Positions 26,274-30,907 of a stretch of 64,000 bases of DNA are shown here, one piece after another. A program made the position numbers and the translations under genes. The notes beneath the pieces are model-generated. The model saw only the letters and a program-made list of their open reading frames with translations, searched no databases and was not told the DNA's origin. The stretch is from the IMG/VR virus record IMGVR_UViG_3300032288_004964, positions 1 through 64,000 of that record; one strand, given 5' to 3'. Position 1 is the stretch's first letter. Every line of letters starts with the position of its first letter.

Positions 26274-27218
26274 TTATAGTTTTTTACCAGTTGATGGGTC
26301 ATAGTTCATAATTAATAACTCAACTCCCTTAGCTTGTTCACCTTTGCCTTCTGAGTTATTACCACCTTGTGCTGAACTTCTAAAAACTTCTTTTTCAGTC
26401 CAGATATATTTGTCTCTTGGTAACAATTCTTCTAATAAAGGAAAATAGTAATAAGATAGTGACCAACGACATTTTGATTTTTTAATTAAATCTAATAGCC
26501 TTCTGTGTGATGCTGGTCCAAACATACCTTCTTTATCAGCTCCATACCAAGATAATCTTTTGGCATCATCATCTCCATTTTCATCAGGTCTGTGATATGG
26601 TGGGTCTAAATATAGATAAGTATCTTCTGAGTCATATTTATTAATAAGTTCTTCAAAATCAATATTAAGAAACTCCTTAATAGTGGATAACTTATCTGTG
26701 TATTTATTTTTCTTTAATTTATCAATAAGAACTTCTAGTTTCAAACGGTCTTTATCTTTCTTATAACCATTGAAACCAGCTCCTCTTGGATAAACCGAGT
26801 TGTGAGCTGATGTAATTAAGAAAGCATAAATTGCTGCTTTTTCAAAATCACCAATTTCAAAGTCCATATTATCTAGAAAATCATTCTTGATATATTCTCT
26901 ATAAATACCCTTATAGAAATCCCATTTTTTCAAAGGGTCTGTTTCTGTTGTATTTAGTAAGGTTTTTTTAAGATTCTCTAAGTGAATAACAAACTCAGCT
27001 GGTTGAGATGCACACTTATATAAATTAACTTGGTGACGGTTTTTATCATTATAGATAACTACATCAAACTTTAGTTTTGGATCATCCATATATGTTCCCA
27101 TTGAGCCAGAAAATGGTTCTAGATAAGTTTTGATACTACCATCTTTAGGTATTTTTGAATTTATAAATTCAATAAAAATATTTGAGGATTTTCCTCCAAA
27201 ATAACTTATAACTGACAT
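26274..27218 (-). CDS. dam: DNA adenine methyltransferase (Dam/D12 class)
   Basis: YFGGK, YLEPFSGS, YND, YLDPPY, ELLIMNY motifs. Confidence 0.9.
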   Translation of the reverse strand: MSVISYFGGKSSNIFIEFINSKIPKDGSIKTYLEPFSGSMGTYMDDPKLKFDVVIYNDKNRHQVNLYKCASQPAEFVIHLENLKKTLLNTTETDPLKKWDFYKGIYREYIKNDFLDNMDFEIGDFEKAAIYAFLITSAHNSVYPRGAGFNGYKKDKDRLKLEVLIDKLKKNKYTDKLSTIKEFLNIDFEELINKYDSEDTYLYLDPPYHRPDENGDDDAKRLSWYGADKEGMFGPASHRRLLDLIKKSKCRWSLSYYYFPLLEELLPRDKYIWTEKEVFRSSAQGGNNSEGKGEQAKGVELLIMNYDPSTGKKL

Positions 27219-27225
27219 TTTAATT

Positions 27226-27741
27226 TTATTTATTTTTATATTTGATTTGGTCTTCTAATGAAGGTCTTTGATTTCTCGGTGTTAATTCATCTCTAACTTC
27301 CATTAGAATTTTACCAAGATGATTTTGTCCTTTATCGCCACATTTATCACAGGTACATATACCCCAGTAGACATCGTGCCAATAATTACCTTCAACTATG
27401 TCTTGATTAGATGTATTAATTAGCATTTCTTTTAATTCTGGATTGTTTTTAAATTTCTGTCTAACTGCCCAGTTCATTACTTCTAATTTCTTTTCATCCC
27501 AGTTACTTCTTAGTTTAACTTTACTTCCAATCTTTTTAACTTCAGCTGGATTTTTAACTAAAGCTATCATTTCTCTAAAATCTCCAGGTGTGTAGTATTT
27601 ACCATTGATTAGTTGTTGGTCATTAACTTTCATGGCTACATAAAAGTTTTCCACTGATGGATATTTAATACCTTGATGTTCTATTTCACAAGGGTAAAAA
27701 TTAGATAAGAATCTATATCTGCCTTCAAATTTATTTATCAT
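27226..27741 (-). CDS. NADAR (YbiA-like) hydrolase
   Basis: FLSNFYP...YPSVE..Y...W......M...KF...IVEGNYWHDVYWG...GQNHLGKILMEVR. Confidence 0.92.
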   Translation of the reverse strand: MINKFEGRYRFLSNFYPCEIEHQGIKYPSVENFYVAMKVNDQQLINGKYYTPGDFREMIALVKNPAEVKKIGSKVKLRSNWDEKKLEVMNWAVRQKFKNNPELKEMLINTSNQDIVEGNYWHDVYWGICTCDKCGDKGQNHLGKILMEVRDELTPRNQRPSLEDQIKYKNK

Positions 27742-27770: not shown

Positions 27771-28085
27771 TTACCAATACCAAGGTCCGTCTTTATAATT
27801 ATCTTCAAATACAAAATTATCAGATATGTTAATTAGCTTATAAAGGATTACTTTAGATTTAGCTCTTTGAATTCTATTTAATTTTTTACGATAGTGTTTA
27901 GGGGCAGTACTATACCATCCATAATATTCATTATAGAATTTGTACAGAAATTTTCTGTTTATTTCTTCTTCTCTAGTTGATGTTAGATAGTTTCTACTGC
28001 TTCTACTAAAAATAGCAGCATCTTCTAGTTTAAGTGAAATATATTCTTTTTCTCTTAACCAGTGTTTGTTTGTGTGTTTTGACAT
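27771..28085 (-). CDS. Basic, aromatic-rich hypothetical protein ending in WYW; start codon sequestered in a hairpin
   Basis: 104-aa ORF; leader structure described in findings. Confidence 0.75.
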   Translation of the reverse strand: MSKHTNKHWLREKEYISLKLEDAAIFSRSSRNYLTSTREEEINRKFLYKFYNEYYGWYSTAPKHYRKKLNRIQRAKSKVILYKLINISDNFVFEDNYKDGPWYW

Positions 28086-28108
28086 ATTGTAAGTTATTTT
28101 TTAAATAC

Positions 28109-28141
28109 TTACATGTCAATTCTATCTCTTAATTTTTTCAT
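28109..28141 (-). CDS. Putative leader peptide (uORF) MKKLRDRIDM
   Basis: ATG lies 5 nt after a TATATTTG box. Its last codons and stop form the 5' arm of a hairpin that pairs with the downstream ATG. Confidence 0.55.
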   Translation of the reverse strand: MKKLRDRIDM

Positions 28142-28145
28142 ACTA

Positions 28146-28153
28146 CAAATATA
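28146..28153 (-). promoter_or_regulatory. Bacteroidota-type -7 box TATATTTG
   Basis: Matches the TAnnTTTG consensus, upstream of the uORF/WYW/NADAR/dam operon. Confidence 0.6.
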
Positions 28154-28173
28154 TATAATTTTATTTAAATTGT

Positions 28174-28202
28174 AAAAACCCACAATTTTATTGTGGGTTT
28201 TT
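28174..28202 (-). terminator. Intrinsic terminator after tmRNA
   Basis: A5-CCCACAA-tttta-TTGTGGG-T5. Confidence 0.85.
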
Positions 28203-28206
28203 CTTG

Positions 28207-28584
28207 TGGAGATGAACGGTTCTGCCACCGATGTCTTAATAGTTGTTTATATTTATTCTTTTACAGGCTTAGTTATGTTTTTCTAAACTAACAAAATAGA
28301 TACTTTTTTTGAAGGACTCTAAAAAGTTACAAAAAATGGTCTCACCTTTTTTATCCTGTGTGAATCAGGTTGGAGAATTTTTTGATAGTAACTGTTTATT
28401 AGACAGTTGCTAGATCTTCTACCAAGATCATGTTGTTTTGTAGAGCCGCTACTAAATCTTCACGAGTTCCTACTTCATTTGTTTTGCCATTTACGACGTG
28501 TTACTTAATTTATTAATCGGACACTTAACCACCCGATACCTGCATAACTACCACCACACTACCAATCAATTCTAAAACATCCCC
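28207..28584 (-). ncRNA. ssrA: tmRNA (transfer-messenger RNA)
   Basis: 5' GGGGATG pairs with 3' CATCTCC-A, giving the G3:U70 alanine identity pair. Length is ~378 nt, with an internal tag ORF after gtaaat. CCA is not encoded. Confidence 0.88.
28399..28488 (-). other. tmRNA tag reading frame (A)GKTNEVGTREDLVAALQNNMILVEDLATV**
   Basis: Resume codon GGC follows TAAAT; the frame ends TAA TAA. Confidence 0.7.
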
Positions 28585-28606
28585 AAGTGTTATAATTATT
28601 ACATTA

Positions 28607-28637
28607 CAAAGATATATATAATATTCCAAAAGTCAAA
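28607..28637 (-). promoter_or_regulatory. Bacteroidota primary-sigma promoter TTTG-N19-TATCTTTG for tmRNA
   Basis: Exact match to the -33/-7 consensus and spacing. Confidence 0.7.
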
Positions 28638-30490: not shown

Positions 30491-30907
30491 TTAAATTATA
30501 ATTTCATATGAATTTGTATAATCAACCTTTACTTGACCATCATTCATACCTTTTTCTTTTTTAACAAACTTTCTTTGACAATAAACAATAGTAGCTTTTT
30601 CATCTTTTGGTGATTTACTATTCTTTTTAGCGAATTCTGCCGCCTTTTTTAAAACTTCTTTACTTGGAATTAACATTTCTTTTGTTGATGTTATTTCTTT
30701 TGTTTTAATCACAACATGACTACCAGGAACTCCTTTAACATGCATCCATATATCATCATTTTCTGCTATATTAAATGTTAGATAATCATTAGACTTGGCA
30801 TCTTTACCAATATAGACTGTAAATCCATCTATTTCCTTCTTTTGTATATTTGGAAATTTATCCTTTTTAGATTCTAAATATAATTTGAAATTACTAATGT
30901 GTTTCAT
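30491..30907 (-). CDS. NFACT RNA-binding (DUF814) domain protein
   Basis: IGKDAKSNDYLT...DIWMHVKGVPGSHVVI...AAEFAKKNSK...V.K..G...GQV. Confidence 0.9.
   Translation of the reverse strand: MKHISNFKLYLESKKDKFPNIQKKEIDGFTVYIGKDAKSNDYLTFNIAENDDIWMHVKGVPGSHVVIKTKEITSTKEMLIPSKEVLKKAAEFAKKNSKSPKDEKATIVYCQRKFVKKEKGMNDGQVKVDYTNSYEIII

What the first reader, a model, noticed from the sequence alone, without database searches (positions are those of the whole stretch)
27771..28153. Near-leaderless uORF and hairpin gate a small basic WYW protein right after the tmRNA
Seen on the minus strand: TATATTTG box, ATG 5 nt later, MKKLRDRIDM-TAA. The RNA UUGACAU-GUAAGU-AUUU...AAAU-a-ACUUAC-aau-AUGUCAA (28119-28079) can form a ~17-bp hairpin. 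Its 5' arm covers the last uORF codons and stop, and its 3' arm contains the AUG of the 104-aa gene. Inference: a ribosome dwelling at the uORF stop (slow termination or stalling) frees the start codon, so the element senses translation-termination stress. The small, Lys/Arg- and aromatic-rich product next to ssrA would fit an alternative ribosome-rescue or ribosome-binding factor (functional analogy to ArfA/BrfA only; no homology claimed).
Basis: partly seen in the sequence, partly recalled or inferred. Interest (0 to 1): 0.75.

Follow-up and report, generated by a model that had tools for sequence, protein, structure and literature searches.

The report
uORF-gated gene beside phage tmRNA
In a 385-kb freshwater phage, a tiny upstream reading frame ends inside an RNA hairpin that hides the start of a small, unexplained protein gene always found next to the phage's own tmRNA; this is a conserved translational switch of a known general type, guarding a protein family nobody has described.

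Summary
On the minus strand the order is: a tmRNA gene (28204-28584), its terminator, a Bacteroidota-type TAnnTTTG box 4 nt before an ATG, a 10-codon uORF (28141-28109, MKKLRDRIDM*), a 17-bp hairpin (28119-28079, -11.1 kcal/mol) holding the uORF stop in its 5' arm and the main AUG in its 3' arm, then the 104-aa ORF.

The uORF and hairpin recur in 35 distinct leaders of homologues. Remote long-form relatives have the same layout with unrelated uORF peptides and stem sequences. Homologues without a uORF have an open start region.

Every locus with enough upstream sequence (36 of 36) carries a same-strand tmRNA upstream. The family is phage-only and matches no known sequence family or fold.

Best reading: translational coupling. 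The hairpin silences the SD-less start, and translating the uORF to its in-stem stop opens it.

Stop-to-start spacing is too tight in a third of leaders for a parked ribosome and an initiating one to coexist. Formal covariation in the close set is not significant.

The mechanism is a new member of a known kind. The tmRNA-linked orphan protein is the more interesting part.

The parts
28605..28618 (-). Promoter box of the tmRNA gene (TATATATCTTTGTA, containing TAnnTTTG)
   Evidence: One of only 5 copies of TATATAT(N)TTTGTA in the 385-kb genome. TAnnTTTG is enriched 0-30 nt upstream of ORFs. It is the Bacteroidota -7 consensus (PMC7366714).
28204..28584 (-). Phage tmRNA gene
   Evidence: RF00023 full-length match, 33.7 bits, below the gathering score of 47, E 1.6e-11 in the local scan. 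Missed by ARAGORN. nhmmer homologues lie upstream of every family member. The relative in L137 scores 73.3 bits. RNA-library contigs cover 28206-28555 only. The acceptor stem has a G3-U pair, read directly.
28399..28488 (-). tmRNA tag reading frame, 29 codons plus TAA (GKTNEVGTREDLVAALQNNMILVEDLATV*)
   Evidence: My reading. The same frame stays open in window, L001, L002 and L138, with synonymous and conservative changes, and ends in ATV or AVA. The resume codon is not verified.
28174..28202 (-). Intrinsic terminator of the tmRNA gene (stem ACCCACAA/TTGTGGGT followed by a T run)
   Evidence: Read. Equivalent hairpin plus T run follows the tmRNA in the related loci. RNA contigs stop at 28206.
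28144..28157 (-). Promoter box TATATATATTTGTA (TAnnTTTG at 28153-28146), 4 nt before the uORF ATG
   Evidence: 13 of 35 distinct leaders carry the box, always with exactly 4 nt to the ATG. Five long ORFs of the genome have the same 4-nt spacing. The transcription start itself is inferred, not mapped.
28109..28141 (-). uORF, 10 codons plus TAA, MKKLRDRIDM*
   Evidence: Conserved as a 10-codon class (M K K/N x R D R x D M) and a 7-codon class (M K K x L D R L), with synonymous GAT/GAC, AGA/CGA, TTA/TTG/CTA and ATT/ATC changes. The two classes differ by a 9-nt, in-frame indel.
28079..28119 (-). RNA hairpin. The 5' arm holds uORF codons 8-10 and the stop, the loop displays an A run, and the 3' arm holds positions -9 to -1 and the main AUG.
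   Evidence: -11.1 kcal/mol, z -4.4. A hairpin is present in all 35 uORF leaders, -6.5 to -11.5 kcal/mol. The upper helix is paired in 98.9% of cells. Remote leaders have a different stem sequence but the same layout.
27771..28085 (-). 104-aa basic, aromatic-rich protein ending in WYW; orphan, phage-only family
   Evidence: 47 clusters and 74 representatives including 227-270-aa long forms. pI 9.7. All-helical model, pLDDT 75. No family or fold match. Absent from cellular genomes.
27226..27741 (-). NADAR-domain gene, the constant downstream neighbour (context only, not part of the switch)
   Evidence: PF08719, E 4.9e-29. It lies directly downstream in L003, L057, L138, L144, L146 and L148, and one gene further in L026.

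Best explanation
This is a translational coupling switch. The host type does not use Shine-Dalgarno pairing, so a start codon is chosen by being unstructured and preceded by A-rich sequence. Here the hairpin pairs 7-11 of the 12 bases before the main AUG, and in the window the AUG itself, so the 104-aa gene is silent on the naked mRNA.

The uORF is translated in one of three ways: from a leaderless or nearly leaderless transcript (box plus 4 nt plus ATG), by coupling to a small upstream ORF whose stop overlaps its ATG, or on read-through transcripts from the tmRNA gene.

Because the uORF stop codon lies inside the ascending arm, a ribosome that reaches it has melted the whole 5' arm. The 3' arm, the A run and the AUG, 19-27 nt further on, become single-stranded. 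The main ORF is then started by the same ribosome after release (reinitiation or short scanning) or by a fresh one before the stem re-forms. Output of the 104-aa protein therefore follows ribosome traffic, and to some degree dwell time, at the uORF stop.

Shown: the anatomy, its conservation, the co-occurrence of uORF and hairpin, and the SD-less A-rich context. Inferred: that the uORF is translated, that the hairpin represses, and that passage of a ribosome relieves it.

The product is an uncharacterised basic helical protein. Its conserved N- and C-terminal motifs and its constant position after the tmRNA suggest a role tied to the phage's tmRNA or tRNA-type RNA, but that is not shown.
For: Anatomy and stability of the hairpin.

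35 distinct leaders keep a uORF whose stop sits in the 5' arm and a 3' arm ending 0-6 nt before the AUG or containing it.

Coding-type variation in the uORF, and an in-frame 9-nt indel between the two classes.

Remote long-form relatives L137, L135, L141, L142 and L143 have short uORFs with unrelated peptides and stems of different sequence but the same layout (stop in or at the top of the 5' arm in L137, L135, L141 and L143; in L142 the stop lies in the 3' arm). These include two-sided changes relative to the window (G-C to U-A, U-A to C-G).

uORF and hairpin co-occur. uORF leaders pair 7-11 of the 12 nt before the AUG, against 3-5 in five uORF-less homologues (Mann-Whitney p = 1.5e-4, not corrected for relatedness). 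L138, L144 and L148 also lack both.

Loop length varies from 8 to 13 nt, and single changes in the stem go to G-U pairs. That fits RNA on this strand, not a DNA operator.

The genome lacks SD (10 of 276 against 18 in the control window) and has A-rich leaders. The invariant A run in the loop falls at -12 to -17, the region reported as A-enriched and linked to translation efficiency in Bacteroidetes (PMC7366714).

The uORF start is always set up to be translated: box at exactly 4 nt in 13 of 35 leaders, or an ATGA-type overlap with an upstream small ORF.

The leader occurs only in front of this family: 13 of 74 pattern hits, all family members; the rest are chance.

The RNA-unfolding and reinitiation models are established for MS2, f1 VII-IX and rpmI-rplT (PMC12548453).
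Against: There is no experimental or transcript evidence for this mRNA. Metatranscriptome contigs cover only the tmRNA, so the transcription start and uORF translation are inferred.

Formal covariation on the 26 close leaders is not significant. The upper helix is nearly invariant and the shuffle controls reach the observed values. The two-sided changes come from a handful of remote leaders aligned by eye.

The hairpin is modest (-6.5 to -11.5 kcal/mol), and 17 other ORF starts in the genome fold at least as well.

Conservation of R5, D6, R7 and D9 of the peptide in the close set is more than simple coupling requires.

Several homologues do without any leader, so the switch is not essential to the gene.
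Confidence: 0.58

Rival explanations
1. Termination or rescue-load sensor. The main ORF is opened only while a ribosome lingers at the uORF stop, so output rises when release, recycling or trans-translation is limiting. The product would then be a back-up or accessory factor for ribosome rescue, a feedback loop comparable in logic to ArfA or BrfA control by tmRNA.
For: The stop codon is kept inside the ascending arm rather than overlapping the main start, so it is specifically the terminating ribosome that holds the stem open. In 23 of 34 leaders the P-to-P spacing is 28-33 nt, enough for a second ribosome beside a parked one. The gene follows a tmRNA in 36 of 36 loci and in remote relatives. 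The phage carries SmpB, an NFACT-R protein and bS21 but no release factor.
Against: 11 of 34 leaders have P-to-P spacing of 25-27 nt, too tight for co-occupancy. The residues before the stop differ between classes (DM against RL) and are unrelated in remote leaders, so no shared termination-stalling peptide exists. UAA followed by G is not a known poor termination context (own knowledge). The protein has no similarity to ArfA, ArfB, BrfA or SmpB. Synteny with NADAR is equally constant.
Confidence: 0.18
2. Translational operator. The hairpin, with its invariant stem and A-rich loop, is bound by a protein, possibly the basic 104-aa product itself, which represses its own start as MS2 coat protein or T4 RegA do. 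The uORF sets the basal opening rate.
For: The stem and the 3' half of the loop are almost invariant in 26 leaders although the protein has diverged to about 50% identity. Between window and L001 the leader is 83% identical, against 69% for the gene and 48% for the spacer. The product is basic, pI 9.7.
Against: Remote leaders have quite different stem and loop sequences while the protein's conserved motifs are the same, which a specific protein-RNA pair would not predict. The invariance of the stem is partly explained by the fixed UAA, and that of the A run by start-site preference. No RNA-binding fold was recognised.
Confidence: 0.1
3. Nascent-peptide arrest. The conserved peptide (M K K x R/L D R) stalls the ribosome around codon 7 in response to a small molecule, an antibiotic or a host or phage factor, as in erm, cat and cmlA leaders, and the stalled ribosome melts the stem.
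For: R5, D6, R7 and D9 are kept through synonymous codon changes, and the conserved block keeps its distance from the N-terminus in both length classes. A ribosome with codon 7 in the P site would already cover the 5' arm in both classes (geometry). R-D-R fits the +X+ pattern of macrolide-dependent arrest (own knowledge).
Against: The 7-codon class has L-D-R, not +X+. Remote leaders have unrelated peptides. No inducer is evident for a freshwater phage. Conservation could instead reflect limited divergence and a need for an unstructured purine-rich uORF.
Confidence: 0.08
4. No RNA switch. The inverted repeat is a DNA operator or a chance palindrome, and the small ORF is not translated.
For: The formal covariation test is not significant. 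There are no transcript data.
Against: Arm spacing varies from 8 to 13 nt. Stem changes give G-U pairs, which would be C-A mismatches on the other strand and meaningless in duplex DNA. ORF integrity, the in-frame indel and synonymous variation hold across 35 leaders. The same layout recurs with unrelated sequences. The hairpin is strictly absent where the uORF is absent.
Confidence: 0.04

Closest known systems
Translational coupling by RNA unfolding or reinitiation (MS2/fr coat-lysis, f1 genes VII-IX, E. coli rpmI-rplT); review PMC12548453
   Same: The downstream start is silenced by local structure. A ribosome translating or terminating the upstream frame removes it. The stop-to-start distance is positive and tens of nt, as in rpmI-rplT.
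   Different: The upstream frame here is a dedicated 7-13-codon uORF with no evident product function. It sits in an SD-less system, is often leaderless, and its stop codon is placed inside the ascending arm.
Leader-peptide translation attenuation of resistance genes (cat-86, cmlA, ermC and others) - own knowledge
   Same: A leader ORF of about 9-10 codons overlaps the 5' arm of a single hairpin whose 3' arm hides the initiation region of the next gene. A ribosome held in the leader opens it.
   Different: Those leaders hide an SD sequence, depend on a drug-stalled ribosome at a defined sense codon, and need a specific peptide. Here there is no SD, no known inducer, and remote leaders have unrelated peptides.
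Leaderless short-ORF attenuators in mycobacteria (polycysteine uORFs; bioRxiv 10.1101/834739, title and abstract seen)
   Same: A leaderless short ORF at the 5' end of the transcript controls expression of the downstream gene.
   Different: The mycobacterial ORFs sense cysteine through Cys codons. This uORF has no codon bias that suggests an amino-acid sensor, and it acts through a start-site hairpin.
ArfA and BrfA control by trans-translation - own knowledge
   Same: A small basic protein whose synthesis might be tied to rescue capacity through an mRNA hairpin; genomic theme of ribosome rescue.
   Different: The ArfA and BrfA hairpin or terminator lies inside the coding frame and produces a non-stop mRNA. 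Here the hairpin is upstream, there is no sequence similarity, and the function is untested.
MS2 coat protein operator hairpin - own knowledge
   Same: A small hairpin that includes the start codon of the regulated gene.
   Different: No evidence here for a protein ligand, and the stem sequence is not conserved in remote relatives.

Membership tests
Translational coupling by RNA unfolding or reinitiation | The start region of the downstream ORF is sequestered in local secondary structure | tested here: met
   Prediction only. 9 of the 12 nt before the AUG and 2 nt of the AUG are paired in the window; 7-11 of 12 in all 35 uORF leaders.
Translational coupling by RNA unfolding or reinitiation | The upstream ORF runs into the structure, so its translation must unfold it | tested here: met
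   The stop codon lies in the 5' arm in all close leaders and in L137 and L141, and at the top of the 5' arm in L135 and L143. L142 is the exception: its stop lies in the 3' arm, so the uORF still runs through the structure.
Translational coupling by RNA unfolding or reinitiation | Downstream expression depends on translation of the upstream ORF | not testable with these tools
   Needs reporters with uORF start and stop mutants.
Leader-peptide translation attenuation (erm/cat/cmlA type) | A short leader ORF overlaps the 5' arm of a hairpin that hides the next gene's initiation region | tested here: met
Leader-peptide translation attenuation (erm/cat/cmlA type) | A specific leader peptide is required for stalling | tested here: inconclusive
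   The peptide is conserved with synonymous changes in the close set but unrelated in remote leaders with the same layout.
Leader-peptide translation attenuation (erm/cat/cmlA type) | Inducer-dependent ribosome stalling | not testable with these tools
   Needs toeprinting or ribosome profiling.
tmRNA (Rfam RF00023) | Score at or above the family's gathering threshold | tested here: not met
   33.7 bits against 47 in the window. The homologous RNA in L137 scores 73.3. ARAGORN is negative in all loci.
tmRNA (Rfam RF00023) | tRNA-like ends with a G3-U pair in the acceptor stem, a discriminator base and a CCA-type end | tested here: met
   GGGGAUG pairs with CAUCUCC, followed by A and CAA (ACCA in L138); read.
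tmRNA (Rfam RF00023) | An internal tag reading frame ending in a stop codon | tested here: met
   A 29-codon frame is conserved in window, L001, L002 and L138. The resume codon is assigned by eye.
tmRNA (Rfam RF00023) | Expressed as a discrete stable RNA | tested here: inconclusive
   Contigs of four RNA libraries cover 28206-28555 and nothing else nearby. Contigs cannot exclude DNA carry-over, and some derive from relatives.
ArfA / ArfB / BrfA alternative rescue factors | Sequence membership: an ArfA family match, or an RF-1/GGQ domain for ArfB | tested here: not met
   No such Pfam hit for any of 44 family members, even at E up to 10. No RF-1 domain anywhere in the genome.
ArfA / ArfB / BrfA alternative rescue factors | Synthesis from a non-stop mRNA produced by a hairpin or terminator inside the coding frame | tested here: not met
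   The hairpin is upstream of the ORF, and the ORF has its own TAA.
ArfA / ArfB / BrfA alternative rescue factors | Binds stalled ribosomes and promotes release | not testable with these tools
   Biochemistry is required.
SmpB | SmpB fold and family (PF01668) | tested here: not met
   No hit for the 104-aa protein. The phage has a separate SmpB at genome position 238695-239117, 174.7 bits.

The most novel reading that the evidence does not exclude
The leader is a dwell-time meter for ribosomes at a stop codon. It converts a shortage of release, recycling or rescue capacity in the infected Bacteroidota cell into synthesis of a phage protein that works with the phage's own tmRNA-SmpB system. That protein could be a loading, protection or tag-handling factor recognised through its invariant N-terminal motif and WYW C-terminus. 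This would be a virus-encoded feedback loop on trans-translation and a new tmRNA accessory protein.
Probability: 0.13. Interest if true: 0.8.

Novelty: new member of a known kind. Interest (0 to 1): 0.5.

Why it matters
Huge phages carry translation genes whose use is largely unknown. This locus offers two concrete handles.

The first is a compact cis-element of about 60 nt that is easy to mutate. It shows how start-site choice can be controlled in a Shine-Dalgarno-less system by a leaderless uORF plus a hairpin.

The second is an orphan, phage-only protein family that has stayed directly downstream of the phage tmRNA across very deep divergence. That makes it the best available candidate for a phage-specific partner of trans-translation. 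If the protein does act on tmRNA or ribosomes, it would help explain why phages carry tmRNA at all.

A practical point: this tmRNA clade is invisible to ARAGORN and often falls below Rfam's threshold, so surveys have undercounted it.

Tried and rejected
- ARAGORN and Rfam at gathering score found no tmRNA. It was rescued by a permissive scan and by homology.
- Pfam, PHROGs, PDB sequence search, Foldseek against PDB and AlphaFold DB clusters, and the ESM Atlas gave nothing for the protein.
- Two resemblances recalled from memory got no support from Pfam scans of all 44 members at E up to 10, and the model is all-helical. These were the RNase P protein 'RNR' motif against NRIQR, and bS21. Both were dropped.
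- I first took the sequence upstream of some leaders for the end of an ordinary upstream gene. It is a mobile cassette: an opposite-strand HNH endonuclease plus a 51-55-aa ORF that looks ribbon-helix-helix-like by eye only.
- Complex prediction of SmpB + NADAR + the protein returned 'no answer' (score 0.00, partner pLDDT about 35). It counts neither way.
- Formal covariation on 26 close leaders, in two registers, was not significant.
- A scan of 185,579 species genomes found no relative.
- Metatranscriptome contigs gave no coverage of the uORF or the gene, so no transcription start could be read.
- Terminator or attenuator reading of the hairpin: rejected, because no U run follows it.
- SmpB-replacement reading: rejected, because the phage has SmpB.
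Full report
WHAT THE WINDOW IS. The window is the first 64 kb of a 385,333-bp virus record with 28.7% G+C. Its nearest annotated relatives are the 634-kb and 642-kb 'uncultured phage' genomes LR745206 and LR756502, about 71% identical over this locus. Those belong to the huge-phage set that Al-Shayeb et al. assigned to Bacteroidetes hosts (PMC7366714). Public runs that hold the sequence are freshwater, lake and groundwater metagenomes. The genome's own signals agree with a Bacteroidota host. An SD-like core occurs in 10 of 276 long ORFs against 18 in a control window. Positions -20 to -5 are 50-63% A. The TAnnTTTG '-7' box is enriched in the 30 nt upstream of ORFs (consensus and A-rich leaders as summarised in PMC7366714).

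CHECK OF THE OBSERVATION. All coordinates hold on the minus strand.
- TATATTTG lies at 28153-28146, followed by a 4-nt spacer.
- The uORF runs 28141-28109 and encodes MKKLRDRIDM followed by TAA.
- The hairpin spans 28119-28079.
- The main ATG is at 28085, and the 104-aa ORF ends at 27771.

In 121 nt of context the z-score is only -1.2. Among 401 ORF starts of the genome this one ranks 18th for folding energy and 31st for low accessibility. So it is unusual but not unique.

The tmRNA needed work. ARAGORN and Rfam at gathering score find nothing. A permissive scan gives a full-length RF00023 match at 28204-28584, with 33.7 bits against a cut-off of 47. Four things support it:
- a readable acceptor stem with a G3-U pair and a conserved 29-codon tag frame;
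- homologous RNAs upstream of every relative;
- one homologue that scores 73.3 bits;
- contigs from four freshwater RNA libraries that cover 28206-28555 and nothing on either side.

CONSERVATION OF THE LEADER. The protein has 47 clusters of close relatives. I fetched 59 loci, which gave 46 distinct upstream regions. Thirty-five distinct leaders carry the uORF. They fall into a 10-codon class (M K K/N x R D R x D M stop) and a 7-codon class (M K K x L D R L stop), which differ by an in-frame 9-nt indel. Variation is of the coding kind. Asp6 is GAT or GAC in nearly equal numbers, Arg7 is AGA or CGA, and Leu is TTA, TTG or CTA. Amino-acid changes are confined to positions 3, 4 and 8.

All 35 leaders fold into a hairpin of -6.5 to -11.5 kcal/mol that pairs 7-11 of the 12 nt before the main AUG. 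The stop codon always lies in the 5' arm (G-UAA-GU). The 3' arm (ACUUAC) ends 0-6 nt before the AUG, or the stem continues into it. The loop carries an invariant A run.

Between the window and L001 the leader is 83% identical, against 69% for the gene and 48% for the spacer. The leader is unique in the phage's own genome. In IMG/VR its core pattern precedes a family member in 13 of 74 hits; the other 61 are chance matches without a comparable uORF.

HOW GOOD IS THE STRUCTURAL EVIDENCE. A formal count on 26 close leaders is sobering. The 7-bp upper helix is paired in 98.9% of cells but hardly varies, and its few changes are one-sided transitions to G-U. The lower helix changes register between sub-groups. 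The shuffle controls reach the observed scores. There are isolated compensatory cases. For example, the window has U-A where L016 has C-G, through two synonymous changes, one in the uORF and one in codon 2 of the main ORF.

Better evidence comes from remote relatives found with a profile search. These are long forms of 227-270 aa that keep the N- and C-terminal motifs around an insert of about 130 aa. Their leaders have unrelated uORF peptides and different stems, but the same kind of layout:
- L137: MIKIIPTARFQDC*, stem UUAAGUU/AACUUAA, stop inside the 5' arm.
- L135: MKNIKHVFK*, stem AUUCAAGU/ACUUGAAU, stop at the top of the 5' arm.
- L141: MEYTKNKNLKFY*, stem UUUUACUAG.../...UUAGUAAAA, stop inside the 5' arm, 3' arm abutting the GUG start.
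- L142 and L143 also have short uORFs and hairpins. In L142 the stop falls in the 3' arm instead, 5 nt before the main AUG.

Conversely, homologues without a uORF (L044, L055, L057, L058, L059, L138, L144, L148) have an open start region, with 3-5 of 12 nt paired in the five that were scored. A hairpin without a uORF, or a uORF without a hairpin, was never seen. The variable arm spacing (8-13 nt) and the G-U changes argue for RNA on this strand and against a DNA operator.

HOW THE uORF GETS TRANSLATED. In 13 of 35 leaders a TAnnTTTG box lies exactly 4 nt before the uORF ATG, and never at another distance. Five long ORFs of the genome share that spacing. The full box TATATAT(N)TTTGTA occurs only five times in 385 kb, and two of those drive the tmRNA and the uORF. 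This fits a transcript that begins at or next to the ATG, but the start is not mapped. In other leaders the uORF ATG overlaps the stop of a small upstream ORF, or follows the tmRNA terminator by 12-25 nt, which implies read-through transcripts.

MECHANISM. The best-supported reading is translational coupling. In an SD-less system an occluded, otherwise favourable start is silent. A ribosome that reaches the in-stem stop has unwound the 5' arm, which exposes the A run, the 3' arm and the AUG. The two accepted models for such coupling, RNA unfolding and reinitiation or scanning, are reviewed in PMC12548453.

The stop-to-AUG gap is 19-27 nt, so the P site of the terminating ribosome is 25-33 nt from the main AUG. 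In 11 of 34 leaders this is under 28 nt, about one ribosome footprint (footprint size from own knowledge). A second ribosome could therefore not load while the first is parked in a third of the family. That favours reinitiation, or loading immediately after release, as the common mechanism. It does not exclude a dwell-time component in the wider-spaced leaders, including the window (29 nt).

The conserved residues of the peptide keep their distance from the N-terminus, not from the stop, and remote leaders have other peptides. This argues against a shared termination-arrest peptide. Peptide-specific arrest near codon 7 remains a minor possibility within the close sub-family.

THE PROTEIN. It is basic (pI 9.7, 21 K+R) with 20 aromatic residues. 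The model is all-helical at moderate confidence (pLDDT 75, pTM 0.48). The invariant positions are N6, K7, W9, E12, K13, P62, R66, N70, Q73, R74, Y97, Y103 and W104, the last being the C-terminal residue.

Nothing matches it in Pfam, PHROGs, PDB, AlphaFold DB clusters or the ESM Atlas. No cellular genome among 185,579 species representatives encodes a relative.

Its position is remarkably stable. All 36 distinct loci with at least 700 nt of upstream sequence have a same-strand tmRNA upstream, 28 of them within 250 nt. The other eight have a mobile HNH cassette wedged in between. Remote relatives L137, L138, L141, L144, L146 and L148 also follow a tmRNA, and L135 sits among tRNA genes.

Two cautions apply. 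NADAR is just as constant on the other side, and these phages share general synteny, so adjacency alone does not prove a functional tie. The phage also has its own SmpB 210 kb away, so the protein is not an SmpB substitute. A complex prediction with SmpB and NADAR gave no answer.

COMPARISON AND VERDICT. The element works like RNA-unfolding or reinitiation coupling, and in shape like the single-hairpin cat/cmlA attenuators. It also resembles leaderless uORF attenuators in mycobacteria in using a leaderless short ORF. It is not a member of the ArfA/BrfA regulatory type, because the hairpin is not inside the coding frame, and the protein is not ArfA, ArfB or SmpB by sequence.

I rate the mechanism a new member of a known kind. 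It is well documented by comparative data but untested experimentally. The associated protein family and its bond to phage tmRNA are undescribed and are the more promising lead. Its interpretation is partly supported: gating by uORF and hairpin is supported, while termination-stress sensing and a rescue function are not shown.

Noticed in passing
window 28204-28584 (-); tag frame 28399-28488 (-): This phage tmRNA clade is missed by ARAGORN in every locus tried and falls below Rfam's gathering score in most, so surveys that rely on those tools undercount it. Its tag frame is long (29 codons), conserved across window, L001, L002 and L138, and ends in ATV or AVA rather than the usual LAA-type end.
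   Followed up: partly
window 30491-30907 (-): A 138-aa protein with an NFACT-R RNA-binding domain (PF05670, E 4.8e-16), the domain of the RqcH/NEMF ribosome quality-control factors. It lies three genes upstream of the tmRNA. With SmpB and bS21 elsewhere in the genome, this gives the phage several ribosome-associated genes.
   Followed up: no
L003 1593-2421; L026 1528-2453; also L019, L032, L035, L037, L054, L056: A mobile cassette is inserted between the tmRNA and the leader in eight loci: an opposite-strand HNH endonuclease plus a 51-55-aa ORF that looks ribbon-helix-helix-like by eye (not tested). In the 7-codon-class loci the small ORF's stop codon overlaps the uORF ATG.
   Followed up: partly
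whole genome G000; window 28146-28141: TAnnTTTG boxes show a sharp spike at exactly 4 nt before the ATG of five long ORFs. This suggests the phage has a class of leaderless mRNAs, whereas 5' UTRs shorter than 10 nt were reported for only about 3.7% of B. thetaiotaomicron mRNAs.
   Followed up: partly
L006, L007, L008 about 2390-2455: An extra 21-codon ORF (MSKYNRTYHLPWSPGSTKLGI*) sits between the promoter box (again 4 nt before its ATG) and the uORF. Its stop overlaps the uORF ATG, making a three-step chain of coupled frames.
   Followed up: no
L002 4685-4966 (-): In the 642-kb relative LR756502 the slot between the tmRNA and NADAR holds an unrelated 93-aa ORF without a uORF or hairpin, so the 104-aa gene is replaceable.
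   Followed up: partly
L144 758-1036: In one remote relative a ClpS (N-degron adaptor) gene lies immediately upstream of the tmRNA, which adds a proteolysis theme to the neighbourhood.
   Followed up: no
P0063, P0065, P0067, P0082, P0084 (L135, L141, L137, L142, L143): Long forms of the family (227-270 aa) carry an insert of about 130 aa with no family match between the conserved N-terminal and C-terminal motifs. This shows the two ends are the conserved functional parts.
   Followed up: partly
window 26274-27741 (-): NADAR and a D12-class (Dam-like) adenine methyltransferase follow the 104-aa gene here and in most relatives. NADAR is as constant a neighbour as the tmRNA.
   Followed up: partly
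window 28298-28441 (run X17): One abundant metatranscriptome contig matches both flanks of the tmRNA but replaces 142 nt of the middle with 121 other letters. This is probably a relative's tmRNA with a divergent tag and pseudoknot region.
   Followed up: no
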